A stretch of 64,000 nucleotides of DNA from Anthoceros angustus. Lineage: Eukaryota > Plantae > Anthocerotophyta. The stretch is from contig MU008159.1 in assembly GCA_010909165.1 (NCBI GenBank), positions 1,488,001 to 1,552,000 on the forward strand, written 5' to 3'. The notes beneath the pieces are model-generated. The model searched no databases, was not told where the DNA came from, and saw nothing but the letters and a program-made list of their open reading frames with translations. Below are positions 2,862-62,838 of this stretch, in pieces. Made by a program: the position numbers and the translations under genes. Numbering within the stretch: position 1 is the first letter of the stretch; each line of letters starts with the position of its first letter.

Positions 2862-5488
2862 TCAGAAGCCCGCAGGTACACCATCCTTTCTCAAGTCGCT
2901 CACTCCAATCAGCTTGCCGTAGACAAGGCCTCTTGCAACTGGACGGTCCTGAAGGGGCTTCACAATGGTACTCAGGTCTTGTACCACAACTTGGACGATC
3001 GCTCCTGATGACTTGCTCTCTAGCTTATGTCCTCTATCCTTCAAAGCTTCGATGTAGTCACTGGAAAGCTCAATATGGTCCCCTGTCACCACTGTCCAGT
3101 TTTCATACTGCACGACATTGGGGACAAGCTGCACAGGAAACATGAGAGAAACATTAGATGGAAATAGGGGGTCGCCTTATCCGTCTGTCTGGTCCAAGGC
3201 CAGCTACAAAGGGCTGTTTGACTCACCTGATGGTGCACACGGGGAGACAGCACAGAGCTCAGAGGGTCCATTCCCTTCACTAATAGATTGAGTATGACCT
3301 GGGCAATCGCTGTTATGATTTTTGACCCACCAGAAGCTCCAAACACTCCCTTAACCTGGCCATCCTGTGCCAGAAAAAAGAAGGTTTTACACACTCAAAG
3401 ACTAAAAACCTTATGATGACTGCATAGGCAAGCAAGAAAAGACGAGGCGTACCTTAACAACAATTGTCGGAGCCATGGCAGACAGTGGGCGCTTATTGGG
3501 TCTGATGAAGTTTGCCGCAGCAGGAGGCAGCTTGTCAGGAGCGATATCCGTGGGGGCTGCAAAGTCATCCATCTCATTGTTGAGCAAGATCCCCGTGGAA
3601 GGTGACATGAGGAGAGAGCCGAATACATCGTTCACTGTACTGGTGAGCGATACTGCATTGCGCTCTGCATCCACAATACCAAAGTGGCTGGTACCGTGAT
3701 CCGTCAGCTGGTTCCAACTGTAGACAAGGGCATCATCACATGTTAGGGCTTGTAGCTACAACAACTCCGAAGTAAATAATGCGGCTTCCAAAGATGACCC
3801 ACGATGAACACTTTGAACCAAGCATCACATCATGGCTTGCTGTTGCTTGTATCCTGCTGAAGAAGTAGTGGGAGCACACCTTCCACCGTAATAGTCTGCT
3901 GCGAAAGTAGTGTTGTCCACTATCTGCTCCCGAAGCTGAGAGGCAAACTTGGAAGACAGCATGTCGTTTAAAACGTTTGTCACGTCCACGAAGTCGGGGT
4001 CACCTATATTCATACGGATGGCATACGTATGCTTGAAGGCCTCGACCAGGCGGTGCAACCCCAAAGTCCCAAGCACATCCGCTGGTGACTTGTAGCTGGC
4101 AAGGATGTTCAGAATCTGGGCTCCCACAGGAGCATCACAGTCAGCCACCCGTCCAACAATAGAGGCAGCAAAGCACCAAGCATTTTACACAGCCGGGTGA
4201 TGCACATGCACATACCAGAATCAAGCCTGCACCACCAGACGAGGGCGGAGGCATCCCCAGCACACTGTACCCCATCACCTCAGCATAGACAGGCTTCCGC
4301 ACCTTCACCCGATACTCTGCCAAGTCCCTGCGAGTCAGAATGCCCCCTGCTGCGCGGACGTCCTTCACAATGGCTGCCCCAATGCTGCCTGTGTAGAACA
4401 CCCTGGGCCCCAACCTGGCCACCAGCTGAAGAGTCTTGGCCAGCTTCGGCCGATAGCACACATCCCCGGCACCCAAAACGGTCCCATTCCGAGCCAGGAA
4501 CTCCGCCAGGTCCGGGTTCCCCAAGATGACCTCGCTCTTGGACACGATCTTAGCCGCAAGGTAAGGAGTAACCTCGAATCCAGCCCCGGCAATCCTGGCA
4601 GCCGGAAGCACCAGCCTCCTCCATGGAAGCCTCCCGTGCCTCTCCCAGGCCAGGTGTAGGCCGGCCAGCTCCCCCGGAGTTCCCACCGACAGGGCCCCCA
4701 CGGACTTGGCGTTCAGGTCCTCCTCGTACATGTTCTGCGTGAGAAAAGCCAGCCGCATTGAGGCACAGCCCACAAAGCCCATCCAGCCATGCCCTGCAGT
4801 ACAGACTAGAGTAGAGCACCTCGGAAGCAGCGGCAGGAGCAGTCTCCCGCATGTCGTACGCAATGGCCTGGCCGGTGGCCAGCCTGAGCAGCATGAAGGC
4901 CCCGCCCCCCAGGCCGCTGGACTCGGGGCTCACCACCCCGAGGCACAGCGTTGTCGCCACAGCTGCGTCGATGGCGTTTCCGCCATCCTTGAGCACGTCC
5001 CGGCCTACCCCGGAGCACCTGACGTCGTCGGCAGCCACCATCCCGTGATCGGCCTCCACAACCCGGGGCTTCTGATTCTCGTACCCCGTCGCCCACCCAG
5101 AAGCGGGCTGCTGCTGCAGCACGCTCGCATTTCCTCCATCGTACACGGAGCGCCACTGCGAGACGCAAATCAGCACCACGACTGCGCTGCATGCGACCAA
5201 GCTCCCGATCACTGAAATCACGACAACAACAACATCAACTCCTCAGCAGACTGTCAGCAAAAACATCCCATTCCCAAATAAATCTCCCAATATTGCTTCC
5301 TCCTCCCGTTGCAGCTGGAATTCACGGATCTTCTCACTCAGCACAGCGGCCAACTTGGCGCCTGCGGAGGCGGGACCGCGCGCGAATTGCAGGGCTGGAG
5401 CTGGAGCTGGGGCTGAGGCTGAGGCTGAGGCTGCGGCTCCCCGCTCTGCATCGGCCAGCAGGGGCAGCAGGGGCCCGGGGTCGGCCAT
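2862..5488 (-). CDS. GGT: Gamma-glutamyl transpeptidase / glutathione hydrolase, copy A; N-terminal tail plus TM anchor, about 7 exons
   Basis: [62 protein letters not shown] (catalytic Thr), LLNNEMDDF, RPLSAMAP, GASGGSKI, SDLRKDG. Start codon inferred (MADPGPLLPLL). Confidence 0.93.
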
Positions 5489-11479: not shown

Positions 11480-12240
11480 TTCTTCGCTCCTTACTTGCGA
11501 GTGCGGCTCTGCCCTCAATGATTCTGAGGTACACCTTGCTCGTTGTCCCCACGGGGGTCATCACATTGCCACTCACGATGCCATCCGCGATGTCATATTC
11601 GCCAACGCTCGCGAAACCAGCTACATGGCCTGGAGGGAGCGGGGGTATACTCTCTGTACAGGTTGTTCAATCAAGGCTAACCTATACCTTGTCCGTGGCG
11701 ACCAGGTTTCGGTGACGGATGTGGTGGTTACCGATCCTACACGTGACACCATCTCCGCTTAGGTCATCACTAACCGTCCAGGTTGGGCTGCTGCCGGAGC
11801 AGCGGCTCTCAAGGTTCGCAAATATAGCAGGATGCAAGCGGGCCACCTCTTTATTCCGCTTGCACTAGAAACGTATGGGGCAATGGCTAAGGACTTTGAC
11901 AAATTTGTCAAGTCATGTGCCAAAGCTTACCATGCGCGCAGACATAGTGCGGGGCTATCCCTCTCGTACTTCACGGCATACTTTCGGCAACGGGTTTCAA
12001 TTGCCCTTCAATCGTCGCTCTCAACAGCGATCCTCCACAAGGCGGCGACAGTAGGTGACGCATCTTCCTCTACCTCCGTGGTTTGCAAGCCGTTTATTCT
12101 TCCTGCATATGACATTATGGGTGCAATAGGTGACTTTAGGTAGGAAGATCAATTGCTCCTCTGCACCTCGACCCCTGGGTCCCCTTTGGTTGTTCCCTCC
12201 TCGATGGGCTCTTCCCTTCGTTTTTTCACCTCAATAAAAA
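11480..12240 (+). mobile_element. 3-prime end of a CRE-type (restriction-like endonuclease) non-LTR retrotransposon, one in-frame stop
   Basis: Zn knuckle CECG..HLARCPHGG..THDAIRD, then DVVVTDP, AAALKVRKY, FIPLALETYG, FRQRVSIALQ. ORFs 11361-11762 and 11832-12143 share a frame across a single TAG. Ends near AATAAAAA at about 12233-12240. Confidence 0.8.
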
Positions 12241-12677
12241 CTCTAGTCGTCAGCTACTGAGAGGACTCAAGGTTTCAACTCAAAGTTCTTTTCGTGCCTT
12301 TTTGTGTGAATGAAAAACATTTGAACTTGTCTCGCCTTATGGAGTCATCCTTTTAATTAGAGAATAAGCTGAAAAAGAAAGCTATGATGTGAAGATTAAT
12401 TGAAATATGTTTCAGTAAAAAAAAAAAGTTTGAATGTTAAATTATTTTTATTTTTTGATATATATATTCTATTATCTACGTATATCCAGTGGGTATAACC
12501 TAGTAAGAATCACATTGTATATGTCTACCTAATATAAACAAGTAGGTTGAGTAAAGATGTCATTTTTTGTAAGATTAGTATTACGTTTGAGGCTCCCAAT
12601 TTGAAATTCTTTATAATATCATCAATCCCACACATGATGTGTTAAAATTCTCCATCTTCTTCTTCACATATCTAGAT

Positions 12678-14443
12678 ATATAATTTCAAGATTAATCAAT
12701 TGAAGATATAGTATTATGGAAGTATTAAAAATGTACTTAACCATAATTATTGCTAATTACATAAATTTATAGCAAACAAGAGAAGAATGCCCAAGTGAAA
12801 GGTGTTCACGATCAAGTTCACTATAAAAAGTGAGAGGTGTCATATTCTTGTAATTTCTTTTGATATGCTTGTTTTTCAACCAACAATAGTGTATTTTTCA
12901 TTGTCAACTAGAATTATTTTGAGGTCATCTCTTACAATAATTTTCTAACTTAACAATTTAGAGTGCACATTTAGAGTCTCCAATTTCTTCTTTCCATATG
13001 TTTTCCTAGAGCACCTTACAAGTTCATTTAATTTATGTTGAAGGAGTATTGCACTACCAACTGCCTGATTTATTCATTTTCTGCACCTATCCTGTGAACT
13101 CATATGCTTTGAAAATATGGTAGAAACTATGCTTAACATTGTGTCAATCTAACTGCCTCAATCAAGTATTGGCTCTTTAATAGCTTCTTGGGCTTGATAA
13201 TAGTGAAACTCGTTTTGTTGGCGATTCACGATAATCTTATGGGCATCAACTTGATGCATCACTTCTAGTTTTGTCCAAAAATTAGTCCCAATGCAACTAG
13301 TATTATTATAACTGTACAACTCCTAATATAATTATTTTAATTGAGTTCAGCATAGTCCTTCAATATTTATCTTTACCGGTGCAATCTCTTCACTAATATG
13401 GAAACATTTTCTTAAAAATAGATGCATATGATGCAAGAGATAACTATATTGAATGTAATACTTAGTCTATATTGAGGATAATTAATAACTGTTTAGTTTT
13501 TAATATAATAAATAACTAAAATCAAGCATCTTCTTCAAAAATATTTAGAAATATAATTTCAAGATTAATCAATTGAAGATATAGTATTATGGAAGTATTA
13601 AAAATGTACTTAACCATAATTATTGCTAATTACATAAATTTATAGCAAACAAGAGAAGAATGCCCAAGTGAAAGGTGTTCACGATCAAGTTCACTATAAA
13701 AAGTGAGAGGTGTCATATTCTTGTAATTTCTTTTGATATGCTTGTTTTTCAACCAACAATAGTGTATTTTTCATTGTCAACTAGAATTATTTTGAGGTCA
13801 TCTCTTACAATAATTTTCTAACTTAACAATTTAGAGTGCACATTTAGAGTCTCCAATTTCTTCTTTCCATATGTTTTCCTAGAGCACCTTACAAGTTCAT
13901 TTAATTTATGTTGAAGGAGTATTGCACTACCAACTGCCTGATTTATTCATTTTCTGCACCTATCCTGTGAACTCATATGCTTTGAAAATATGGTAGAAAC
14001 TATGCTTAACATTGTGTCAATCTAACTGCCTCAATCAAGTATTGGCTCTTTAATAGCTTCTTGGGCTTGATAATAGTGAAACTCGTTTTGTTGGCCAGAT
14101 TCACGCTGATAATCTTATGGGCATCAACTTGATGCATCACTTCTAGTTTTGTCCAAAAATTAGTCCCAATGCAACTAGTATTATTATAACTGTACTTGTA
14201 ACTCCTAATATAATTATTTTAATTGAGTTCAGCATAGTCCTTCAATATTTATCTTTACCAGGGTGCAATCAGCTCTTCACTAATATGGAAACATTTTCTT
14301 AAAAATAGATGCATATGATGCAAGAGATAACTATATTGAATGTAATACTTAGTCTATATTGAGGATAATTAATAACTGTTTAGTTTTTTTAATATAATAA
14401 ATAACTAAAATCAAGCATCTTCTTCAAAAATATTTAGAAATAT
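12678..14443. repeat. Near-identical AT-rich tandem duplication, period about 873 bp; possibly a decayed hAT-like transposase (weak)
   Basis: 12678-13550 is repeated at 13551-14443 with a few short indels. The minus strand has faint hAT-like traces (LLHHMHLFL, IGTNF). Confidence 0.85.
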
Positions 14444-15603
14444 GAATGACATGAAAAGTAAATATTATTATTTAAAAAATGATTACTTATAATCATTGAT
14501 ATTGACTCTGATAATCCAAGATTATCCAAATAATTAAAATCTTTTAACAACTACATATTGAAAGATTGCTCTGTAATTGCAAGGGACAACCCCAAAATCA
14601 CTATGAAGTCATCAGGGAGATGTTGAGGAGAGCCCAAAGGAAAAAGTGAAAAGGAATAATTAAGCTTTTTATCTAGATATAACGTCATACTCAAGAAGAT
14701 TGATCACCATGAAGTAGAGAGCTTTGTTGCATATATATTATTTAGTTAATGATTAAATATAAAATATAAAAATAATTGTTTTATTTTATATAATATTTAT
14801 ATAAGATAAATATTAATAATTTAATAAAATAGAAAAAATCTAATACATTTCTCGATAGAGATTGCAGAGGAACACTTGGATATACTTTCCTTCCTGCTGC
14901 CTCCGCTCAGCATGGGAGAGTTTATGTACAAGGTATAGAAAGGGTAGACCAAGTATGTAGACCTAATAATAAAGCAAGGGCATACGTTCCCGTCGATATA
15001 TGTATGTTGAATAACAATCTATGTATCGCAGATACATGCGCCAGTGTTTCCATGGCCGCGTGGGTGGCGATGCCAGTTGATGGTGCAAGGGCTAAACGTA
15101 TGGGTGAGACGTCCGAAGTCCCAGGGAGACGAGGCTCATGGTTGAAAGGCAGTGCTTGAGGTCTCGTCCAGGCTGGTTCGGTATCACTGCTACTTCTTTC
15201 CAATCGGCGATGTAAATGCTCCTTACCAAAATTCAAGTTCGGATTTACTTGATCGCCACCGAGGTCATGGTCTCGTTGAGTTCGCTGAAAGATGACAGCA
15301 GATATGTACTCAGCCCGTGCTCTGTTTAAAACCAGCTTCAATGGATGGTGAAATGGCTGGAGGTGCAGCAGCCAAGCTCACCAAGGCTTGGCACACATCC
15401 CACGCATTTCAGTCCTTCAAGCAATCGAAGGTGGCTTCAACAGGCGCATGGATAGGGATAGGGCAATCCGCAGTGGTTGGCAGAAGTGAAGGACATGAGA
15501 GATCGCCTCTCTGAATCAGGCCGTTTTCTTGCACAAATCCCAGCTATTTGGGCATTCAGACCTGAGCCCTTAAATGGAATTGGAACGGCATGCAGCGTGA
15601 AGG

Positions 15604-17193
15604 ATGAGCATGGGCGGATGCTGCCTGCCTCGCTGCCTCGGTGATCTGCGCCGACGGCTCGGTTTCCACCTATGTAGGCGGGGCATTTCAGGTAGCAGGA
15701 CAGGGGACGATGGGATAGTGGACGAGCGTTCTTGGGAAGAGGTAGGGACTGTCGGGTGACGCCTTGCTGCTTTGTGCCTGGAGGATTGTGCTGAGGTTCC
15801 GGGGGATTTTTTGGCACAGGATGCGGCCGAGGGTTTGGCAGAACAAGACCATGAGATGCAGGCCAGAATAGCGTCATACTTTCACAGGAGACCTGGGAAG
15901 CTGGCAACGCCAGTTCCCACCAGGGACAAGGAGCTGGAGGCCATCAACAGGTTCAAGCAGAGGGCGCGCAGGGCCAAGGAGTTGGAGCACAAGAGGTACC
16001 AGACCATGATGAACAAGGTGGGTGCCGCTGTGCAGCGGCAGAGCGTTGAGGATACCTTCGCTAAAGCTGAGAAGCTCTATCTGTCACGTGCTCAAGTTGC
16101 TGAGGGAGCGAAAGCTCTCAGTGTCTCGCAATGCCTGGATGCGTTGCAGGAGTCGCTGGACGAGTTGCGGTCCAGTTATGGTGATGCTGGCAGTGAGAGG
16201 GGAGGGGGTGCAAGGGGGAACCAGCAGATGGAAGTGGAGCAGCCTCTTGAGCTTGGCAAGGGAAGGGCTCGAAGACCAGAACGGTTTCAGAGCGCTGAAA
16301 CGGACCGGATCAAGGAAATTGCCGGGCGGTGGATTCAGTCAGCGAAGTCTATTGGGAATCTGCGGGTGGAGCACGAGGTTAGGACAACTCTGAAAGAGGT
16401 CTATGGAGTTGATATTGTTGAAAGGGTGGAGGATGTCCGGAAGTTCATGGACGAGCTTGACTCGGATCAAGGCCGTCTAGCACGTTATTTGAAGGAAAGG
16501 ATGAAGAGCGGTGATGTAAGGGTAGTCCCAGCGGAAACATATGAGAAAGAGGAAGAGACAGAGACAGAGTCTGAGGACATGGAGTCTGATGGAGAGCCTG
16601 TAGGGTTGGATGAAGAAGATGAAGGAGAGGGTCGTAGGGTACCTAGAACTAGACCAGGTCCGTTTTTGTATGCTCTGTGCCCAATCGCTGACATCATACA
16701 ACACTTGCGTGGTCTGAATATTATAGCTGGGAAGACAAGGTTGCCTATACCAGTGTCAAGCATCACCAATCTCCCTGATGCAACAATTATCAACTGGTTC
16801 AGAAACAAGGCATTCCTCATTCTTAAGCAGTACAGGCCAGCGAATAACCTGTGGGAATTACGAAGGTTGATCAACTATCACATCAGGTACTCTCTCATTT
16901 ACACTCTAGCCAAGAAGCATAAGTATTCCATCTCGAAGACGATCAAACTGTACGGGAAAGCTCCCTCTGTGAAGATACCAACCATGGTGATTCGAGGACA
17001 GGTGGTTCTGGAAACCATAGCCGAGTTTCCAACAGTGCATCAGGTCAATTCCATTCGCAGAGGCTTTGACAAGGAAACCATGACTCCGCAAGTGTTCGTT
17101 GATCGTCTATTAACTGGATGCAAAAGGGATGGCGCTATTGCTGATACTATCCCGGGCATGTGTAACTCAAGGATGGAGCTACAGAATTCCTGA
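15604..17193 (+). CDS. Nuclear-encoded protein with group II intron maturase domain X, no recognisable RT domain, putative mitochondrial presequence; exons 15604-15741 and 15820-17193
   Basis: C-terminal CPIADIIQHLR..RLPIPVSSITNLPDATIINWF..QYRPANNLWELRRLINYHIRYSLIYTLAKKHKYSISKTIKLYGK matches domain X. A 78-bp phase-0 intron (GAG|GTAGGG ... TTTTTTGGCACAG|GAT) joins an Arg-rich N-terminus MSMGGCCLPRCLGDLRRRLGFHLCRRGIS to the long ORF. Confidence 0.8.
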
Positions 17194-18002
17194 AGCCATT
17201 CATGTAAGGCATGCCCGCCCTATGGAGGGTTGTCACTCGAGCCAGACAGCGGTCTCTCATTTCACTGCAAGGCCAAGCAACAGCCTGATGCATGGTGAGA
17301 TTTTGTGAGGCTATATTCAGATGCAGCATCTCGCACGATGGAATAAGCTCTTCCATTCCCAGGTGAATGGACATCAACTGTGTGAGCACTACTGGCTCAC
17401 CGATTTCAACCAAAGCACAACTGAGCACCTGGTACGTGGAAGCTCTAACCCCTATGTTTCTGTGATGGCAGCTCAGGGTGTATTTCATCAGTCTAGTGGC
17501 AACGCTGTGGTTCATTGTTGCTTAAGCTCTTACATAACCTCCTCCTTTTACCCACCTTTTCCGACTTGTGCCAATGTTTAGGGCTCCGTTGGGAGATCCA
17601 GCGGGATTCAGGGCTGGCCATGCGGATGCAACCTCATGAACATGAGTTTCTCAACTGCTGGAGAGCCAGCTGTCGCCATGTCATTCCAGCACAAGTTTTC
17701 TTTTGTTCTAACAGCTCGAAAGGGTGTCTTCTCCCTAAGCGGCGGGAAAGCCTACCAGGCACAGAGACCAAGGGAATCAAAGAAGGCTGTGTCACGGATT
17801 CGTGTTATGCTAGTTAAGCGTGTCCACCTGCCTCAGACGTCAAGCGGGTGTGCAACTGTTCCACGAGGAGAATGACTGTCAGTCCAGAGGACGACAGCAA
17901 TCAAGTCATCAGTATTAGTTATCAGTGTGAAATGGCTGAGTGGACGGGGATGTTCTTCCGAAGTTTGTCCCGCCTCTGCTCCAAGCTTCTTGAATCTCTG
18001 CT

Positions 18003-20248
18003 ATGTACATGAATTTTGGAATGTCAGTGGGCGTTGTTAGAAGCGTGTTCTGGTGGCGTTTGTCAGATGTTGCGGTGGCCTTGGTCCTCCTTCTCGCAAC
18101 TCCAGGAGAAGTACGTGCCGGGGCATTTCGGGATGACAGGCCTAGGATTGTGGAAGGAAACAGGGGCGTGGTTGCTGCCGACGATGAGCGCTGCTCATTG
18201 ATAGGCGTGAGAATTCTTCGCCTTGGAGGGAACGCTGTTGATGCTGCTGTTGCTACAGCGTTGTGCTTGGGAGTAGTCAATCCTACTAGTAGTGGCGTTG
18301 GTGGCGGAGGATTTCTGCTAGTGAGGCGATCAGATGGAACTGCTGAAGCGTACGACATGCGGGAAACCGCCCCTGCTGCTGCTTCTGAGGTATCGCTATG
18401 TCCCGCCAACATGACATCCGTTTTCGCTGTACAATGGTTCTGAACTGTTCTCGTGTGCCCTCCTTGACAGGCTCTATACCTCAGCAATCCCAGCTTGCTG
18501 TTGCAGGGGATTTTGTCGGTTGGGGTGCCTGGTGAACTAGCTGGGCTTCATCTCGTTTGGCAGCGCCATGGAAAGCTGCCTTGGGAAAGGCTTTTCAGAC
18601 CAGCGACAAAGCTTGCCCGCAATGGCTTTGTTGTTTCGAGATATCTTGCTGAATTGCTTCAAGAGCTGGAAGCCCTCGTTCTGGGGTCCGAAGGGCTTAG
18701 ACAAATTTTTGCTCCCAACGGCACAGTACTAGTTGCTGGCGATATATGCTATCGTAAAACACTGGCTAGGACTTTCGGCGCTGTCGCTGAACGAGGACCA
18801 AGTGTGTTGTACAATGGATCCGTAGGTGAGAAGCTAGCGTCAGACATTCAAGGTGCTGGAGGGATTTTGAACCTGACGGATTTGCAGCAATACAAGGTGA
18901 AAATGCGACAGCCACTGAGCACAGATGTTCTGGGATTGACTGTATTGGGAATGCCTCCTCCATCATCGGGAGGAGCCTGCACAGCCTTGGTGAGTAGGCA
19001 ATTGTTCTTCGACAGTGGCGAGTGTCTCGTTTCGCTTAATCGGATGCTTACTTGTGTGACAGTTGCTCGCCGACAGATTCTCAATATTCTTGCAGCTTAC
19101 GGCCTCGGGGGTGCAACTGGTGCTGTGGGTCTTCACCGTACAGTGGAGGCTCTCAAACACTGCTATGCTGTGAGGATGAATCTGGGCGACCCGGATTCTA
19201 TCGACATTTCGGCCGTGCTGGCTGACATGCTGTCTTCAAACTTTGCCGATGAGCTTCAGAAAACGATCAATGATACTACAACGTTCGGGCCAGAGCATTA
19301 CGGTGGCAGGTACATGTGGGCATGGGAAGTAGCATGTGCAGTAGGTTGAAATACCCAACCCAGTTTGGATGTTTCGCTCTGACCAAATGCCATTCGGTTT
19401 TCCTGCCGCAGGTGGAACCCGCTCAGTGATCACGGAACGACTCACTTTTGCGTTGTCGACAAGGAAAGGAATGCAGTTGCCGTGACCTCAACCGTAAACG
19501 CACCATTTGGGTCCCGGTTTGTCTCCTCTTCTACAGGGATAATCATGAACGACGAGATGGGAGATTTTGCAATTGTTCAAAATGGGAGTGCGCTTCCAGC
19601 AAGCCCAGCTAACCTGGTAGCACCAAACAGACGTCCTTTGTCTTCCATGACTCCAACCATAGTTCTTGAGGTACTCATAATGCGGTTTGCCGCAATTGGT
19701 ATAAAAGTTCGGGTACAACCTTGTGCGTCCGATCGATTACCTCTAAATTTCTGAGCTGATGTAGAGAGGACAGCTGAGAGGCGTGCTCGGAGGGAGTGGG
19801 GGACTTCGGATTATCAGTGCAGTTGTGCAGGTGCTACTTAACGGATTTGTGAAGGGAATGGATCCGCTATCATCCGTCTTGGAGCCAAGGGTGCACCATC
19901 AGGTGAGCCACGGACTCCTGGGCTGCTTTTGAGAATTTCGATTTCTTAGCAACTTGGGTGAGCCAATCAGCTGTTTGAACTGGGTGTCTGCAGTGGCTGC
20001 CCAACGTACTGCATTACGAGAACGACACAGCCGTATCAGGGCAGCATTTTGAGGTTCAAGCTGGCTTGAGGGACGCTCTCCAAAGAAGAGGCCATGTGCT
20101 GCAGAGTGATAACAAGTCGGGTGCAATTGTTCAGCTCATAGTGCAGGAGCTGGCGGATGCGGGTCGCTCAAAGCACATCAATTCCAAGTATGGGAAGCTA
20201 ATTGGAGTGAGCGACCCAAGAAAAGATGGTGTGCCAGCAGGCTACTAG
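18003..20248 (+). CDS. GGT: Gamma-glutamyl transpeptidase, copy B; signal peptide or anchor, about 6 exons
   Basis: [93 protein letters not shown]. Intron positions are shared with copy A. Confidence 0.93.
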
Positions 20249-22374: not shown

Positions 22375-25300
22375 TCATGGTTCACAGAAAAGCTGCAAAG
22401 CCTGTTTGCGGAGTACCCGCATCTGCTGATCATAAGCTGCAGAGTTGCTGAGAAAGAGAGAGTTGGTGGATTGTCCTTTGGATAACCAGTTGAGAAACTC
22501 TGTACCTGAGGTCACCAGTTCCAAGTTGTCCGGGTCGAGATTGGTGAAAGGAGCATCCAGATCTTTCAGCTGGGCGACCACAACCTGTCTAGCGTTCAAG
22601 TTATCTTGGATAAGGACTTGCCATTCCTCACACAAGATAATCCGGATAGTTGGAGGTACCTTCAAACCCTTCTCGACCCCTGTCTGAATCTGTGCAATCC
22701 ATGTAAGCAACAAAACCTGTGCAGCACCCACTGACGTACACGAAAGTCGGAGGACCCATTCATCATCGGACCATGTGCAGACGTCACCGAAAATGCCTAG
22801 CTCCAGGCTCGTCTCGACTACCCTTAGTGCCCTTATTTCCCAGCCTAAAACCCAAAGAGCATCAACGAGTGCATTGTGGAAGCCCCGTTGCATCCCTGCA
22901 TTCAAGCCCTCCCTATCCAATCCCTGAAGGAACTCAGCTACTCCTTGCCACCTTCCATCCTGCTCTCCAACTTCATCCAACAACATTAACTCAGCTAGGA
23001 CTGACGGCAATCCAAGGTACTTCAAACAACCAAACAGACCCACAATATCCTCAGACCTACTGGACCTTGTCAAGGCTGCCAGGAGGGCAGTGAACACAAC
23101 TACTTTGGGTGCCAACACTGCTTTAACGGATTGAAGGATAGCTACCAGTCTCCCATTCACAGCCTCATCTGCGCCGAAGGCTTCTATTAACACAGCATAT
23201 GAGGTATGATTTGGGTGAGGTCCCTTCCCAGCAACGAGGTCATCATGCAAATCCAGCGCTTCTTTGTACCGAGCTGACCGTACGTAAAACCTCAGAACAG
23301 AGTTAAACCCTCCAATGCCACCGAGCATACTCTCCTTTCTCATCTTCTCTGCTAAAGCTGCACCCTTGTCAAATTGACCACATAGGCTATAAGCCTCTAG
23401 AAGGAAAGAATATGTTTGCACATTGGGTTCCACTTTTTTGCGAGCCATGGTCTCTTGCAGCACCTGCTCTGATTTCTGCCATAGTCCCTTCCTCCCATAC
23501 CCTGCCAACGAATCAGCCCAGCAATTTCCTTAAGAACAAAAGCTAGGTAGGTGTAAGGTTCATCAGTCAACCATCCACCCAACCTTTCGCAAAATTCACC
23601 GGTAAGGATAGGGACAACATACCTAGTATCACCCAGTTGTGACAAGCCAGAGACACAGGTTGCTTCCCGTGCAAATTTGTCAGCAGCTTCTCCGCATCCT
23701 CTATGCGTCGCATGTTGCAGCAGGCACCAAAAACCGAGCTCAAAAGACTATCATTAACCTGCTTGCCAAAATTCCGCAGTGACTCTGTATAGAGTTTCAA
23801 GCAGTCATCCACCATGCCTCTCTTCCCATGAATGTCAATGAGAAGTTTGAACGATGTTACATTAGGTGCTACACCGGACCTAATCATATGATCATATACT
23901 TTCATAGCCTGGAATTGACTGCCTCGACCAAAAACAAAGATCAGAGAATTGTAGACCTCTACACTAGGGTAATAACCCGCTTGCTCCATGTCGGCCAATA
24001 TCTGCCATGCATCTTCGTACTTCCCTGCCCTTCCAAAGGTAAAGAGAAGCGTATTGTAGAACGCAAGATCAGGTCTACTTCCATGCTCCCTGAATAGCCG
24101 GAGAACCTCTTTCACCTGATACACAAACCGAGTCAATCAGTAGCCCATTATGTTAGGGTAGCTGCCTTGTGGTACATGCCCCAATGAATCACTGTCAAAA
24201 CCCTGAAGACAACAGCACTCCATGACTTGCCAAGAGGTAAACGAATCTGTAAGCATCATTCTTACCCCATCAAAGAGGCCAGCTCTCCCATAGGCATTGA
24301 GCAAGGCATTGAATGTCTTCACGTCTGGGGGAAATCCCTCGTGTTTCATTCGCCCAAACCAGAATTTTACATCCTGAAGCCGCCCTGCCTTCCCATAGAT
24401 GTCTACAAGCGTGTTGTATGTAACAAGATCCAAGGGTAACCTGGATTTACCATCACTTGCAGACATGATATCTGTCACTATTTGCTCCACTGCATCCAAG
24501 CGTCCAGCTTTTCCATAGACAGAGATCAATGAATTATAGACAGTCAGATCAGGCTGCAGGCCTGAATTCTGCATTTCCTCCAACACTAAATCTAGCTGCT
24601 CCCATTCTCGGACTCGTCCGAATGCAGTGATCAGTATTGAGCAGGTCTGCAAATCAGCAGCAACGCCAGCCTGCATCACGGACCATCGTCAGAACAGCCG
24701 CAAATAGAACGGTCCACAATAATTGAAAAGAGTAGACTGATTGGGCAGTGAACAAGGACAACCTTACGCATCCGCTTGTAATATTCAGCAACTTTTCCAG
24801 TTTCTCCGGCTCTTCCCAAAGCATTCAGAACCACATTATAGAAAACGACGTCATGCTCCAGTGTCTGCTCATTGAGTTGCTCAAACACTTCAAGCATTCT
24901 CTTCGTGTCCCCTACATAAGAAGGCAGGAGTTGAGTCCGAGGAACGAATGTGGACCCAGTTCAGACTCTCTTCATCACTGGAAAGAAAAGTGACATGCAT
25001 ATCTTCTACAATGGAACGTAGGATACCTGGCCTAACAACATCAGAAAGAAATGGGAAGCATCATCATATGTACGCTGGATAACCATCATCTCCTAGAATT
25101 GACTCCAATCAGTGCAGAAGAGGCAAATACCGAGTTTGGCGTATGAGTTCAAGGCTGCATGATATGTGGATTTGTCTGGAGTATAGCCCCGTGAAACCAT
25201 AGCTCTAAATAATTCAACAGTGTTGGTGAACCGGCCCTTGCGACAAGCCAGCAAGACTAAGCTTGTGTATGTTGCTCTATCAGGCTGCACACCGTCCTGT

Positions 25301-27663
25301 TTCATTGTGTCAAACAGCGAAAGGGCTGTTTCCCAGCCCTTTGGAATTCGAGAACATCCATCAATCATAGCATTGTACAAGGATACCAAAGGCTTCAGAC
25401 CCACCTGACGCATTCTATCAAGTGCATGGACTGCTCTGTGTAGAGATCCACTTCTTAGATAGCCTAGAACTAAGGGACTATATTCAGGTAATCCAGGGTG
25501 CAACCCATCCTTTTTCATATACGTCAACACAAGCTCCACTTTGTCTATTCTTCTGGCTTTTGTAAGAACATTTATGACGATCTGGTACAAGTTCTCGTCA
25601 GGCTGGTAGTTGGGCTGATCTTGTAACCATTCCAACACTCGTAAAGCAGTAACCCAATCCCTCTGCAAACCAAGATCTGCCATGACCTGCTTTACCTCTT
25701 GAGAGGTGATTTTGCCAGCGAACGCATTCATGAGTTGCCCCACTTCCTCACTAGTCTTGGCCACATGCAAAGATCGTATTATTTCCAAAACATTCTCTGA
25801 CTTAGAAGGAGGACTTATGGGCCGAGCTTCATTCCTCCATTTACTAACAATCATTGGGAGCCTTCTTGGTCCAGCAGCTTCTCCACTTCTATTCCATTCA
25901 TAGCTTCCTCCCTGATAGTTGGTTCCACTATCGAGTCGATTGAGACGAGATGAGAACATAGCGTCAGGAAAAACGTCAGACCTTGCTTCCATGTCGCTCT
26001 GAGCTTCCGTTTCAGAAAAATCCGCTGTTGTTATGGACAGCCCGAGCAATTGTTGCACCTTCCCTACTCCATCTAGCTGCAGTTGACCTCCTTCAGAAAC
26101 CCCAGTCTTGCCCGCAGTGTCTGCAGGCAGCTCAGGGAGAACTAGCCCGTGCTGAGCTGAACTAGTTTCATTCACAGTAAAAGGTACCTCAATTTGGGTC
26201 AGTGCTGACGAAGCATTGGTGTCCATACCGGCAGAGACTCCACCCTCCTCCAATACAGAAGCAGTTGGTAAGGAACCGGCAGAGACTCCACCCTCCTCCA
26301 ATACAGATGCAGTTGGTAAGGAACCGGCAGCCACTTTTTTCCTGGAAACTCTAGCCACTCTCGGCGATCGCTGCACCTTCGAAACTCCATCTGGCTGCGA
26401 CTGTCCTTCTCCGAGAAGGGAAGTCTCTGGATCTGCAGATACTTCAGGGGGAACTACTACCGGATCCTGAGCTGCACTAACTCCGTCTCCGGCAAATTGG
26501 CCCTGAACCTGAGTCAGTGCTGACGAAGGATCGACGTCCCTCACGGCAGACCCTCCACCCACCTCCAATACCAAAGCAGGTGACGAAGAAACTGAAACCC
26601 TTCTTTTCCTGGAAACTCTGGTCACCCTCTGTACTTGTTGTACTTTCGAAACTTCACTTAGCTGCAGTTGTCCAGCTTCCAAGACAATAGTCTCAGGGGA
26701 GCTGTCTGCAAGGTCTGTAGGCAGCTCAGAGAGAATTGAAGAATCCTGAGCTGAACGAGCTGCATCTCCAGCAGAAGGGCCCTCTATCGGGGTCAGTGCT
26801 AACGAAGCGTCGCTGTCCCTAACTGCAGGCACTCCACCTCCCTCCTGTACAGAAGCATTTTGTAAAGAAACAGCAGCCACTTTCTTTCTGGAAACTCTGG
26901 CCACTCTCGGCTTAACGGGAACCGTCAGGGTGACTCCCTTGCCATCATGTGCGGTTTCCGAAGCAAGGCTGTCAGGGCTGTCTGGAATAGAAATCTTGGT
27001 AGACCCTTTCCTTCGCACAGCTTTGACAGTCCTTTTAGGTTTGGACTTTGTGCTCGGTGCAGAGTCATCTGACCCTAGTGGATTTCCTTCCACATTGCTG
27101 ACGCTCAGCGAGGCTGCAACAGGACTTTCGACCGCAACAGCGGTCGCAAGAAGCCGTCTTCGCCTGGAACTGTCCAGGAATCCATCTACATTCCTTCCTC
27201 TAGCAGAACACAATTCGTTCCTCCGAAAATCCCACGACTGCAACCTGCAAGCCCCGGCATCGCCTACCTTGAGTGCATATACCAGTGCACATTGCATAGT
27301 CACAACCTGCACTCCCATTCCCATCTTCCGAGTGCAATCCAAGCAAGCCGCATCCTCCCTTCCAAGCCTCTTTCCAGGAGCAACGCCACCTATCTGAAGA
27401 CATCCTCCGCCAGAAAAGACTCTTTCCCCTCGTGCACCAGTGCCGACAAGCTCTCCATTGCTCACGGTATTGACACACAATGGATGCACATTCTGAGCTG
27501 GAAGGAACAGCTGGTCCCGCAATCGAACTCTCCCGTTAGTCAGAAGTACAGAATGCGACTCCCTAACAAGCAGCAGTGTGGGCGAAATCCCTTGGCTGCC
27601 CTGCGGCCGCCGAAGTCGGTAGCCCAGCTGCGGAGAACACGCACAATGCTCGGCCCACAGCAT
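22375..27663 (-). CDS. Large P-class PPR protein with pTAC2-like/SMR-like C-terminus and a long repetitive N-terminal extension, about 5 exons, probably organelle-targeted
   Basis: Many 35-aa repeats (PDLTVYNSLISVYGKAGRLD, PDVKTFNALLNAYGRAG, PDLAFYNTLLFTFGRAGKYEDA). C-terminal FHNALVDALWVLG..WVLRLSCTSVGAAQVLLLTW..PPTIRII resembles PPR-SMR proteins. Start codon uncertain. Confidence 0.88.
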
Positions 27664-60551: not shown

Positions 60552-62276
60552 TTATAGAGTGACGAGAAGCATGCCCGGCTCTGTCTCCGTGAACTGCAAG
60601 TCGAGCTCCTCGGTTGCCAGGTACTGCTTGATGGCAATGGGCAATCTGGCGAGGGCCCGGGCTCCAGGTGTGTGGTGCCCTGTTCCAACACACACGAACA
60701 TCTGCTGCTTGCTACGTTGCAAGGCTGCAGCCAGACGGAGGGACTTCAACTCCTGCTTCAGCAACACAACAGCCTCCTTGACATGCAGGCCGTGCAGATC
60801 CAGCAGCCTGGCCTTGCCCTGCGTCAGCTTCTGAAACTCCCCTGCAATAGCAGCGTTCCTCTCGTGGAAAATGGCCTTCCCCGCTTTGTCGTGCGCAGCC
60901 TTCATCTGCTCGTTCAACTGATGCCCCTTGCTGCTCAACTCCTTGGCCAAGGCCCTGTTGCCTGCAATATACGCCTGCCTGGCCTGCTCGAAGCAGACAT
61001 TCCGTGCCCGGGCATGGTCTCTGGCCTCCTCCCGCATGTCAGCATACAAGTTGGACACAGCCTCCCCCGTGTTCAACCAGGGTTTGGGAGTGTGCCTCTG
61101 CGCCTTGCTGCTCAACTGAAACTTGTGCTGCTGCTGCAGCTTGTCCTCTAACCGGGTGGCCCCGAAGAAGCTATCTACCTGAGAAGTGCGGGCAACGCTC
61201 CTTCCCAACCCCTGGTAGGCGTCGGCGGCCGCCCCCTTGGCCGAGCCACTCCATCCCTTCCTGGCCACGGCTGCGAAATTAGTTGACGAGGAGCGGTAGT
61301 CATCGCTGGTGCTGAGCTTCCGCATGTCCCCCTCCAGCAGACTATACATGTTACCCCCGCTCCCGACATCCCTACTCCCCAGGTCATACCCCGCCAAGGC
61401 CGGAAAATCCGCGGGGGTGGACACCGACGGCACATGCGCCACAGACTGGTACTGCTCCGACACAGATCCCTCGTCCTGCATCTCCAGCTGCTGCAGCATC
61501 TCCACCGTCAAGCTCAAATCCCCCCCGTTAGCATACAGCAACTCCGTCAAGCTCTTGATGGCGAACCCCGGAAATCTGGCCGTGAGCAACGCCACGGGAT
61601 CAATATCCACCAGCTCATCAGGAAATGCCACGCCCCCGGCCCCCCGGGAATTGTATCCCCAATTCAGGTCCGCGTCCTCCGCCCAGCCGGCCCTGGCCTC
61701 GCTCGGGGACGAGGCATAAGCGTAGTCCGCCTGCGCCTGCAGCTGCTCCAGCACGTCCCCCCCGAGGTACAAGCTGCCGGAAATTCCCCCTTCTTGGAAG
61801 TCGGTGGCCAGCGCAGAGGAGGAGGAAGCGGAGTCCCGCGGCCTGTAGCTCCCGCCGTGCGCCAGGCTCTGCGGCGCCGCCTCAAAACCTACAGCCACCT
61901 GGTGCTGCTGCCGGTGCTCCTCCAGCCCGAAGCGCCCGCCGTCATCAAACACCTTGCTCTGCACATCGAAGTCGGAGATGAGATTCTCCGGCAGCTGCGA
62001 CAGCCAGTACTGCTGGTACAAATCATCATCGGAGCTGGCCTCCGCCGCTGCTGCCGCCGCCGCCGCCGCCTTGGCCACGGGCTCCACTGCTCCGCTCTCA
62101 AATCTGCTCAGCTCCACGCCGTCCCGGCCGCTGCTGCTGCTGCCGCTGCCGTTGTTGTTGCTGTTGTTGCTGTTGCTGTTGCTGTTGTTGTTGTTGACGC
62201 TGCTGCCGCTGCCGGGCCTCATGCCCGAGGGCACGAATTCCTGAGCATTGGGATTGAGCCTGCGCAGAGACGCCAT
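60552..62276 (-). CDS. CID7: PABP-interacting PAM2 + CUE-like + DUF1771 + Smr protein (CID7-like), single coding exon
   Basis: LNPNAQEFVP (PAM2), PWLNTGEAVSNLYADMREEARDHARARN..FEQARQAY (DUF1771), LLDLHGLHVKEAV..VCVGTGHH (Smr). ATG chosen at MASLRR; the ORF is open further upstream. Confidence 0.9.
   Translation of the reverse strand: MASLRRLNPNAQEFVPSGMRPGSGSSVNNNNSNSNSNNSNNNGSGSSSSGRDGVELSRFESGAVEPVAKAAAAAAAAAEASSDDDLYQQYWLSQLPENLISDFDVQSKVFDDGGRFGLEEHRQQHQVAVGFEAAPQSLAHGGSYRPRDSASSSSALATDFQEGGISGSLYLGGDVLEQLQAQADYAYASSPSEARAGWAEDADLNWGYNSRGAGGVAFPDELVDIDPVALLTARFPGFAIKSLTELLYANGGDLSLTVEMLQQLEMQDEGSVSEQYQSVAHVPSVSTPADFPALAGYDLGSRDVGSGGNMYSLLEGDMRKLSTSDDYRSSSTNFAAVARKGWSGSAKGAAADAYQGLGRSVARTSQVDSFFGATRLEDKLQQQHKFQLSSKAQRHTPKPWLNTGEAVSNLYADMREEARDHARARNVCFEQARQAYIAGNRALAKELSSKGHQLNEQMKAAHDKAGKAIFHERNAAIAGEFQKLTQGKARLLDLHGLHVKEAVVLLKQELKSLRLAAALQRSKQQMFVCVGTGHHTPGARALARLPIAIKQYLATEELDLQFTETEPGMLLVTL
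62130..62212. repeat. Coding (GTT/GCT)n trinucleotide tract (poly-Asn/Ser)
   Basis: gttgttgttgctgttgttgctgttgctg... encodes NNNNSNSNSNNSNNNGSGSSSS. Confidence 0.85.
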
Positions 62277-62838
62277 TGCCGCCGGCGCAGCACAGCGCTG
62301 CGCTCGCAGCGGTGCGGGCAAATCCAGGCCGCAGAGAAGCTCCAGGCAGCTGCCGCTCGCAGCCCCGCCGCCCGCGCGCTGCGGTCGTGAACCCGGGCCG
62401 GGTCGGGTCCCCAACCCTACCGTGTGCGCGCTGGATGCTGCTTTCGCGATGGGAGCTGCTGTAGCTTGCTCCTCTTGTTGCAGCCACTCCTGGCTCGCTC
62501 CGTTCCTGTTGGCGCAAGCCACCAGCTGCCGTGCGGCGATCGCATCATCATGCCTTCATCTCTTACGTCCATCCCGCAACATAAACCTGGCTTTTATAAC
62601 CCACCTTTTAACCTGCCCATGTCACCCAAAGTAAGTTTCCACTAGGTCAGTCCCTCGGTACTATGTAGATGTATCTCATATTTCTGCCAGAAGCAAAACT
62701 TCCAGCCACACTCTCGGGAATTGCAAGTTTGCCTTCCAGATCGATACTTGAGACGGACGACGGACGACGGACGACGGAAGACGCACACTGCTTTCCGTTT
62801 CCTTCAGGAACAGGTGAAGCCGATTCCAGAAGCCGGCT

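What the first reader, a model, noticed from the sequence alone, without database searches (positions are those of the whole stretch)
15604..17193. Nuclear, spliced, putatively mitochondrion-targeted maturase with domain X but no reverse-transcriptase domain
Seen: an uninterrupted second exon of about 457 codons ends in a clear group II intron maturase domain X (IINWF...N...YHIRYSLIYTLAKKHK..SKTIKLYGK). It is preceded by a long charged helical region and an acidic tract. A 78-bp canonical intron links it to an Arg-rich first exon that looks like a mitochondrial presequence. No RT motif (QG, YADD-like, FLG) appears in the gene or in the ORF track upstream, and no group II intron RNA context is evident. 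Known: plant nuclear maturases nMAT1-4 and MatR carry RT-derived domains plus X. From memory, nMAT1-type proteins have a helical insert between RT7 and X, which this middle region loosely resembles. Inference: a domesticated, RT-less trans-acting splicing factor for organellar group II introns, possibly one half of a split maturase whose RT partner is encoded elsewhere.
Basis: partly seen in the sequence, partly recalled or inferred. Interest (0 to 1): 0.85.

Follow-up and report, generated by a model that had tools for sequence, protein, structure and literature searches.

The report
Nuclear maturase gene without reverse transcriptase
A land-plant nuclear gene keeps only the RNA-gripping rear part of a group II intron maturase and has lost the whole reverse-transcriptase part. 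It is transcribed, spliced and conserved, so it is probably a stripped-down helper for splicing organelle introns.

Summary
Window 15604-17193 (+) is a two-exon gene. Exon 1 has 46 codons and is Arg-rich. The intron is 78 nt, GT..AG. Exon 2 has 457 codons.

Pfam finds domain X (PF01348, E 8e-13) and no RT. A profile of full-length RT+X maturases, run on all six frames of the 64 kb, matches only 15760-17190, at profile positions 448-797, which lie after RT7.

The "charged helical region" is homologous to a roughly 190-aa helical linker that a subset of full-length maturases carries between RT7 and X. AlphaFold models it as all helix, not as an RT fold.

Assembled contigs from the source organism and two close relatives carry the exact 15742-15819 splice. 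A more distant orthologue (57% identity by BLASTP) has a spliced mRNA contig with the same architecture and in-frame stops upstream of its ATG.

Synonymous sites between the two orthologues are saturated (pS 0.78), while pN is 0.12-0.16 in the helical block and in X. Indels in the coding region are multiples of three.

Decayed loci in two Marchantia species still join RT5 or RT7 motifs to the same linker, so the RT was lost by 5' truncation of a full-length nuclear maturase.

Function as an organellar splicing cofactor, and the organelle targeted, are inferred. I found no description of a fully RT-less nuclear maturase. I rate it a new variant of a known kind.

The parts
15300..15603 (+). Transcribed leader. 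Contigs extend further upstream, to about 15035. It holds many upstream ATGs and an in-frame TGA at 15598-15600.
   Evidence: Contigs of X1, X2, X6 and X10 cover 15300-15739 and run over the left end. uATG list and stop.
15604..15741 (+). Exon 1 coding part: 46 codons, Arg-rich and presequence-like.
   Evidence: Translation. Seven Arg and 1 acidic residue in the first 33 aa. Of 7 substitutions listed for relatives in 15618-15670, 5 are synonymous and 2 are conservative. The orthologue has a 40-codon exon 1 at the same place.
15742..15819 (+). Spliceosomal intron, 78 nt, GT..AG, phase 0.
   Evidence: Joint 'skips 78, GT..AG' in contigs of four runs. The orthologue has a 79-nt intron at the homologous position, removed in mRNA contig L002.
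15820..15918 (+). Start of exon 2 (aa 1-33), just upstream of the linker homology. May hold a vestige of RT7.
   Evidence: Homology to full-length maturases starts at aa 34-37, 13 aa after the end of RVT_1 in P0183. The RT7-vestige idea comes only from my reading of the spacing.
15919..16194 (+). Helical block A (aa 34-125). It is homologous to the first part of the RT7-X linker of full-length maturases and is the most conserved part of the protein.
   Evidence: 84% identity to the orthologue, pN 0.12. Aligned to P0183, P0138, P0009, P0003, P0031, P0062, P0006 and P0027. Helices 35-86 and 90-121.
16195..16284 (+). Variable, disordered linker (aa 126-155).
   Evidence: 37% identity with large length differences to the orthologue. 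pLDDT below 50.
16285..16509 (+). Helical block B (aa 156-230). It is homologous to the second part of the RT7-X linker.
   Evidence: 63% identity to the orthologue. 45-53% identity to the Marchantia polymorpha relic. Helices 154-195 and 197-229.
16510..16644 (+). Acidic low-complexity tract (aa 231-275, net charge -15), variable in length.
   Evidence: In-frame indels of 6, 9 and 15 nt in close relatives at 16554-16621. Disordered in the model.
16645..16965 (+). Domain X (thumb) of a group II intron maturase (aa 276-382, net charge +15).
   Evidence: PF01348 E 8e-13. pLDDT 93-98. The only structural match is LtrA 8h2h_D. All nine near-invariant family residues are present.
16966..17193 (+). 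Post-X segment (beta hairpin plus helices, aa 383-435), variable tail and stop codon. No HNH endonuclease.
   Evidence: Strands 383-391 and 394-402. Collinear with P0183 up to its aa 788 of 896, so it ends before the HNH part. 76% identity to the orthologue over aa 279-435.
17194..17431 (+). 3' untranslated region up to a further splice donor.
   Evidence: Contigs cover it up to 17432. Indels here are not multiples of three (1, 2 and 20 nt).

Best explanation
This is a free-standing nuclear gene derived from a group II intron maturase. It has lost the entire reverse-transcriptase domain and the endonuclease.

What it keeps is a short, new, Arg-rich N-terminal exon, the lineage-specific helical linker of about 190 aa that sat between RT7 and X, an acidic tract, the basic X (thumb) domain and a short post-X segment.

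Shown: the gene structure, its transcription and splicing, the absence of RT, its descent from an RT-bearing nuclear gene, and long-term purifying selection.

Inferred: the protein is imported into an organelle, with mitochondria more likely than plastids. There it binds group II intron RNA through the X domain, helped by the conserved helical blocks. It would act in trans as a splicing cofactor, alone or together with RT-bearing maturases or other factors.
For: - Domain X: Pfam E 8e-13. The model is confident, and Foldseek returns only LtrA bound to its intron. All near-invariant X residues are kept.
- No RT anywhere in 64 kb, and no intron RNA.
- The N-terminal two thirds align collinearly with the post-RT7 linker of full-length RT+X(+HNH) maturases. 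The match begins 13 aa after the end of RVT_1 in P0183.
- The splice is confirmed in the source organism and two relatives. It is also confirmed in a distant orthologue by mRNA contig L002, whose product is P0151, 568 aa.
- Against that orthologue, pS is 0.78 (saturated) and pN is 0.12-0.16 in block A and X.
- In close relatives the leader plus exon 1 differ at 47 of 440 sites and exon 2 at 47 of 1384. Coding indels are all multiples of three.
- The Marchantia paleacea locus L008 has an RT7 motif fused in frame to the linker start. The M. polymorpha locus L009 has an intact YADD motif next to linker block B. Both lack X and are disrupted.
- nMAT1-4 are organellar splicing factors (PMC3927076).
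Against: - There is no experimental or predictor-based evidence for localisation.
- The presequence-like exon is not conserved in sequence. The leader holds 18 upstream ATGs, so the start codon is not proven.
- From my own knowledge, not tested here: in LtrA, high-affinity intron binding needs the RT part. An X-only protein may therefore bind weakly or need a partner.
- The runs are only guessed to be RNA.
- I could not place the protein relative to named nMAT1-4 sequences.
Confidence: 0.7

Rival explanations
1. It is one half of a split maturase. The X-bearing protein would assemble in the organelle with a separately encoded RT-domain protein to rebuild a two-piece maturase, as proposed for Pelargonium nmatRT and nmatRX.
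For: Pelargonium is a precedent for a nuclear maturase split into two expressed genes (PMC5174742). Earlier notes from this scan report two other maturase-like genes in this genome. The conserved helical blocks could be an interaction surface.
Against: No RT-only gene was seen in the window. The two other genes are unchecked notes. The Pelargonium split lies inside the RT (after RT4), not after RT7. No binding test was run.
Confidence: 0.15
2. It is a truncated duplicate of a nuclear maturase that is transcribed but has no function and is on its way to decay.
For: The homologous loci in two Marchantia species are decayed. The leader is long and full of upstream ATGs. A 3' UTR intron could expose the mRNA to nonsense-mediated decay.
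Against: The reading frame and architecture are kept between orthologues whose synonymous sites are saturated, with pN 0.12-0.16 in the two conserved domains. Coding indels are in frame, and exon 2 diverges about three times more slowly than the leader. All near-invariant X residues are kept.
Confidence: 0.05
3. It is an RNA-binding protein that has been reused for a task other than group II intron splicing, for example RNA stabilisation, processing, or a nuclear or cytosolic role.
For: Loss of the RT removes the part that anchors canonical maturases to their intron (my own knowledge). The helical block is more conserved than X, which suggests a function centred elsewhere.
Against: Every characterised X-domain protein in plants (MatK, MatR, nMAT1-4) is tied to organellar group II introns (PMC3927076). 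The N-terminus is presequence-like.
Confidence: 0.1

Closest known systems
Plant nuclear maturases nMAT1 and nMAT2 (type I)
   Same: Free-standing nuclear genes outside any intron, with an N-terminal targeting sequence, a conserved X domain and no D/En domain. They are trans-acting splicing factors of mitochondrial group II introns (PMC3927076). The window protein's nearest full-length relatives include a Porphyridium hypothetical protein. A published maturase tree groups a rhodophyte plastid maturase with nMAT1/2 (PMC10012718). I did not establish that the Porphyridium protein is that maturase or that it is plastid-encoded.
   Different: nMAT1/2 retain a (degenerate) RT domain. This protein starts after RT7. 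I could not test orthology because no named nMAT sequence was retrievable.
Pelargonium nmatRX / nmatRT (nuclear, split matR)
   Same: A maturase gene in the nucleus that has lost N-terminal RT parts, gained a presequence and a spliceosomal intron, and is transcribed (PMC5174742).
   Different: nmatRX still encodes RT subdomains V-VII and has a known RT partner gene. It derives from matR. Here no RT subdomain is left, no partner is known, and a matR origin is disfavoured (AU p 0.05). The two lineages also differ: an angiosperm genus there, a seed-free land plant here.
MatK (plastid trnK intron maturase)
   Same: A maturase reduced at the RT end that still serves several introns in trans (PMC3927076).
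   Different: MatK is organelle-encoded, sits inside its intron and keeps RT remnants. No MatK_N match here.
Full-length intron-encoded maturases with a long RT7-X linker (P0183, P0003, P0031/P0152, P0062, P0006)
   Same: They share the linker blocks, X and the post-X segment collinearly with the window protein. P0152 lies inside an organellar ATP-synthase gene next to other maturases.
   Different: They carry RVT_1, and P0183 also carries an HNH tail. They have no acidic tract, no presequence exon and no spliceosomal intron.
LtrA (Lactococcus Ll.LtrB intron protein)
   Same: It is the only solved structure matched. Its thumb/X region aligns to aa 309-381 by sequence, and Foldseek aligns 147 columns of the model to it.
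   Different: LtrA has RT, X, D and En domains and no long linker.

Membership tests
Group II intron maturase (RT-X-D/En intron-encoded protein) | Domain X / thumb (PF01348) | tested here: met
   49 bits, E 8e-13. Foldseek match to LtrA 8h2h_D. Near-invariant residues kept.
Group II intron maturase (RT-X-D/En intron-encoded protein) | Reverse-transcriptase domain (RT0-7, PF00078) | tested here: not met
   No RVT_1 hit. tblastn and a six-frame profile search of the whole window find only post-RT7 positions 448-797. The N-terminal part is all-helical.
Group II intron maturase (RT-X-D/En intron-encoded protein) | DNA-binding / HNH endonuclease domain | tested here: not met
   No HNH family in Pfam. 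The alignment to P0183 stops at aa 788, before its Cys/His-rich tail.
Group II intron maturase (RT-X-D/En intron-encoded protein) | Encoded inside domain IV of a group II intron | tested here: not met
   No Rfam group II intron match at gathering score over the window, or at E<=1 over 12000-20000. The gene has a spliceosomal intron and nuclear neighbours, GGT and PPR genes.
Plant nuclear maturases, type I (nMAT1/nMAT2) | Free-standing nuclear gene that lacks D/En | tested here: met
Plant nuclear maturases, type I (nMAT1/nMAT2) | Retained (degenerate) RT domain | tested here: not met
Plant nuclear maturases, type I (nMAT1/nMAT2) | Orthology or phylogenetic grouping with named nMAT1/2 | not testable with these tools
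   The three homology searches and three cluster look-ups returned no named nMAT sequence. There is only an indirect link, through a Porphyridium relative and PMC10012718.
Plant nuclear maturases, type I (nMAT1/nMAT2) | Mitochondrial targeting | tested here: inconclusive
   Exon 1 is Arg-rich with few acidic residues. No predictor or experiment was available.
matR / Pelargonium nmatRX lineage | X domain groups with matR | tested here: inconclusive
   The window clade falls outside the 97%-supported clade that holds matR. Forcing it together with matR costs 22.8 lnL, AU p 0.0497.
MatK | MatK N-terminal region (PF01824) and plastid location | tested here: not met
   No such Pfam hit. Nuclear context.

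The most novel reading that the evidence does not exclude
The protein is a minimal, autonomous maturase that stands in for an organelle-encoded one. In the hornwort that this genome probably comes from, plastid matK is reported as a pseudogene (Anthoceros angustus, PMC6082510). Marchantia carries only decayed relics of this nuclear gene. I did not check Marchantia's matK status here. On this reading the RT-less X protein, perhaps together with the second RT-less X family seen in passing, would be imported into plastids and would have taken over MatK's job on plastid group II introns.
Probability: 0.1. Interest if true: 0.85.

Novelty: new variant of a known kind. Interest (0 to 1): 0.62.

Why it matters
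Maturases are the protein partners from which the spliceosomal core protein Prp8 is thought to descend. How much of the RT scaffold is needed for RNA-folding help is an open question.

All described plant maturases (MatK, MatR, nMAT1-4, Pelargonium nmatRX) keep at least part of the RT. A gene kept under selection with no RT at all is a natural deletion experiment. It says that X plus a helical linker is enough for some selected function.

The relics in Marchantia show the route: a full-length nuclear gene, then 5' truncation and capture of a presequence exon. If the source is a transformable hornwort, the function can be tested directly by knock-out and by organellar splicing assays.

A second, apparently independent RT-less X family suggests that this reduction recurs.

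Tried and rejected
- **Homology searches.** The three homologous-protein searches returned almost only the orthologue, and no named plant maturase. They used the whole protein, the X region, and alignment A1.
- **Cluster look-ups.** These gave mostly unnamed or 'retron-type RT' labels. Placement against nMAT1-4 was therefore not possible.
- **Literature.** The original nMAT paper (PMC140517) is not held. Searches for an RT-less or X-only maturase found nothing relevant.
- **ESM Atlas.** The feature search gave only generic bacterial X-domain clusters.
- **AU tests.** Both were borderline: grouping with matR p 0.0497, and with the second X-only family p 0.058. Neither relationship is firmly excluded by the 152-column X alignment.
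- **Rejected ideas.**
  - RT exons hidden upstream in the window.
  - A recent mitochondrial DNA insert as the source of the Marchantia relics. No organellar protein in the exhaustive search is more than about 30% identical in the linker, while the relics are 45-68% identical.
  - An intron-borne context.
- **Left out.** I did not submit the joined exon 1 + exon 2 protein of the window to any tool. The exons were handled separately by reference. P0151 is the database's own spliced product of the orthologue.

Full report
**The sequence.**
On the + strand an ATG at 15604 opens 46 codons ending at 15741. An in-frame TGA sits directly before the ATG, at 15598-15600.

A 78-nt GT..AG intron (15742-15819) follows. 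It holds an in-frame stop if retained.

Exon 2 runs 457 codons from 15820 to 17190, with the stop at 17191-17193.

Pfam places Intron_maturas2 (domain X) at aa 283-382 of exon 2, at 49 bits and E 8e-13. No RT family appears. NCBIfam gives nothing. By sequence, the best PDB match is the thumb region of LtrA, and it is weak.

**Is the RT really absent?**
I ran tblastn with 74 relatives of 400 aa or more against the window and the orthologous contig. Many of these carry RT plus X. Every hit fell between 15817 and 17190.

I then built a profile from 16 full-length RT+X proteins (891 positions) and ran it with all filters off on six-frame translations. It matched only 15760-17190, at profile positions 448-797. 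The same held in the orthologue.

Rfam finds no group II intron RNA in the window.

The neighbours are ordinary nuclear genes:
- gamma-glutamyltranspeptidase genes on both sides;
- PPR genes at 22-28 kb;
- an Smr/DUF1771 gene at 60-62 kb.

**What the N-terminal two thirds are.**
The exhaustive representative search gave 198 hits. Nearly all matched only aa 280-430.

A subset also matches the charged helical region: P0003, P0006, P0031/P0152, P0062, P0138, and P0183 and P0009. P0035 and P0027 line up with it in the alignment.

In P0183, RVT_1 ends at aa 439 and query aa 37 aligns to aa 452. The alignment then runs collinearly through about 190 linker residues, X and the post-X segment to aa 788. 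The alignment stops there, and the Cys/His-rich HNH-like tail (my reading of the sequence) lies in the remaining residues up to 896.

Alignment A2 shows two conserved linker blocks shared by all of these proteins. The gene is therefore the post-RT7 part of a maturase lineage that carries a long helical RT7-X linker.

AlphaFold (72-row alignment, mean pLDDT 74) models four long helices over aa 35-229 with no strand. It shows a disordered acidic tract and a very confident X domain (pLDDT 93-98) followed by a beta hairpin. Foldseek against the PDB returns only LtrA in its intron complex.

By charge, X is +15, the tract before it is -15, and block A is mildly basic.

**Expression and gene model.**
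One run from the source organism (100% identical) holds both a spliced contig, joining 15739 to 18 bases past the intron at 15818, and an unspliced contig.

Three runs from two related organisms hold contigs of 0.9-2.6 kb with the same joint. They are about 3-10% diverged. The longest contigs reach from before 15300 to 17432.

These runs are only guessed to be RNA. The presence of the spliced form is the evidence that they are.

One full-length orthologue exists: P0001, 527 aa, 57% identity by BLASTP and 66% over aligned columns.

Its genomic contig L001 has a 40-codon exon 1 and a 79-nt GT..AG intron at the homologous GAG|GAT junction.

A separate 2181-nt contig, L002, is the spliced form. 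It encodes P0151 (568 aa) and has 350 nt of leader with in-frame stops.

**Selection.**
I compared the window with L001 by Nei-Gojobori counts.

| Region | pS | pN | aa identity |
|---|---|---|---|
| Whole exon 2 | 0.78 (saturated) | 0.23 | 66% |
| Block A (aa 34-125) | 0.78 | 0.12 | 84% |
| X plus post-X (aa 279-435) | 0.80 | 0.16 | 76% |

The aa 126-155 linker and the acidic tract are free to vary.

In the close relatives:
- the leader plus exon 1 differ at 47 of 440 sites, and exon 2 at 47 of 1384;
- coding indels are 6, 9 and 15 nt, all in the acidic tract;
- 3' UTR indels are 1, 2 and 20 nt.

Of the seven listed substitutions in exon 1, five are synonymous. This supports translation of exon 1.

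**Origin.**
Two short database proteins match the linker strongly. Both come from nuclear assemblies of Marchantia:
- P0002 from GCA_014180765.2, M. paleacea (PMC11735767);
- P0004 from GCA_001641455.1, M. polymorpha (PMC8049495).

In M. paleacea a single open piece reads an RT7 motif directly into the start of block A. It is 63-68% identical to the window protein. An RT1-like bit lies upstream in another frame, and retrotransposon gag and protease ORFs lie just downstream.

In M. polymorpha an intact RT5 YADD motif lies next to block B, in another frame.

Neither locus has an X domain within 10-14 kb.

These look like decayed copies of a full-length nuclear maturase of the same lineage. The window's lineage therefore lost the RT by 5' truncation and gained a new first exon. 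An intact Marchantia copy elsewhere is not excluded.

**Phylogeny.**
On 152 X-domain columns the window protein and its orthologue form a long branch. It lies outside a 97%-supported clade that contains matR (Silene, Gnetum), Pelargonium nmatRX and a second X-only family.

Forcing the pair together with matR costs 22.8 lnL units (AU p 0.0497). Forcing it together with the other X-only family gives p 0.058. Both results are borderline.

The shared linker is independent evidence for kinship with the P0183, P0003 and P0006 group.

P0006 is a Porphyridium hypothetical protein. A published maturase tree groups a rhodophyte plastid maturase with nMAT1/2 (PMC10012718). That is compatible with a type I nMAT-like origin, but I could not test it.

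**Comparison with the known.**
nMAT1-4, MatR and MatK all retain RT parts (PMC3927076).

The nearest precedent is Pelargonium. There matR moved to the nucleus and split into nmatRT (RT II-IV) and nmatRX (RT V-VII plus X) (PMC5174742).

The present gene goes further. No RT subdomain remains, and no partner is known. My literature searches found no description of such a protein.

**Mechanism.**
Shown: the protein is a presequence-like exon, a conserved helical linker, an acidic tract and a basic X domain, all under selection.

Inferred: it is imported into an organelle, binds group II intron RNA through X, and helps splicing in trans.

Canonical maturases anchor to their intron partly through the RT (my own knowledge). 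This protein may therefore depend on the helical blocks for extra RNA contacts or for pairing with another factor.

Earlier notes from this scan mention two other maturase-like genes in the same genome. Other agents take the genome for a hornwort. I used both only as leads.

Plastid matK is reported as a pseudogene in Anthoceros angustus (PMC6082510). That motivates the speculative MatK-replacement reading.

**Limits.**
- No localisation predictor was available.
- No named nMAT sequences could be retrieved.
- The runs are of guessed type.

Noticed in passing
L004:414-1529 (P0154); L003:8001-8951 (P0011); also P0016, P0018, P0020: This is a second family of RT-less X-domain proteins, 290-371 aa. 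Each has a presequence-like N-terminus, an acidic tract and X, but no helical linker. One sits on a 1.9-kb transcript-like contig from the same SRA series as the orthologue. Another sits on a eukaryotic contig beside an intron-split phosphorylase gene. Six-frame profile search finds only X on both contigs. In the tree the family is separate from the window protein.
   Followed up: partly
window 17432-17581 and beyond: There is a GT..AG intron of about 150 nt in the 3' UTR, about 240 nt after the stop codon. The source organism's contig then continues 885 nt towards the downstream GGT gene. Relatives appear to use a different, more distal acceptor. This could mean overlapping transcripts or an mRNA sensitive to nonsense-mediated decay.
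   Followed up: partly
window 15035-15603: The leader region holds 18 upstream ATGs, including a 5-codon uORF starting at 15590 just before the main ATG. Contigs cover 15300-15603 and run further upstream to about 15035.
   Followed up: no
window 4141-4863 (-) and 18003-19349 (+): Two gamma-glutamyltranspeptidase genes flank the maturase-derived gene in opposite orientation.
   Followed up: no
window 22375-23508 (-) and 25093-27663 (-): Two long PPR-repeat ORFs (PF13041 and related). The 856-aa ORF is uninterrupted.
   Followed up: no
window 60552-62522 (-): A 656-aa ORF with a PAM2 motif, DUF1771 and an Smr domain.
   Followed up: no
window 13158-13319 (-) and 14006-14140 (-): The AT-rich stretch at 12-15 kb (32% GC) upstream of the gene holds two short ORFs that share the peptide HQVDAHKII. 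This suggests a repeated element.
   Followed up: no
L006:996-11716: This contig carries an ATP-synthase alpha/beta-type gene interrupted by several maturase ORFs, including P0152, one of the linker-bearing relatives. It is presumably an organellar genome with several group II introns in one gene.
   Followed up: no
same genome, other pieces (notes s1-670435, s1-694455): Earlier first-stage notes report a nuclear MatR-type maturase with an acquired N-terminus, and a maturase with a dead RT motif, elsewhere in this genome. Either could be a partner or paralogue.
   Followed up: no
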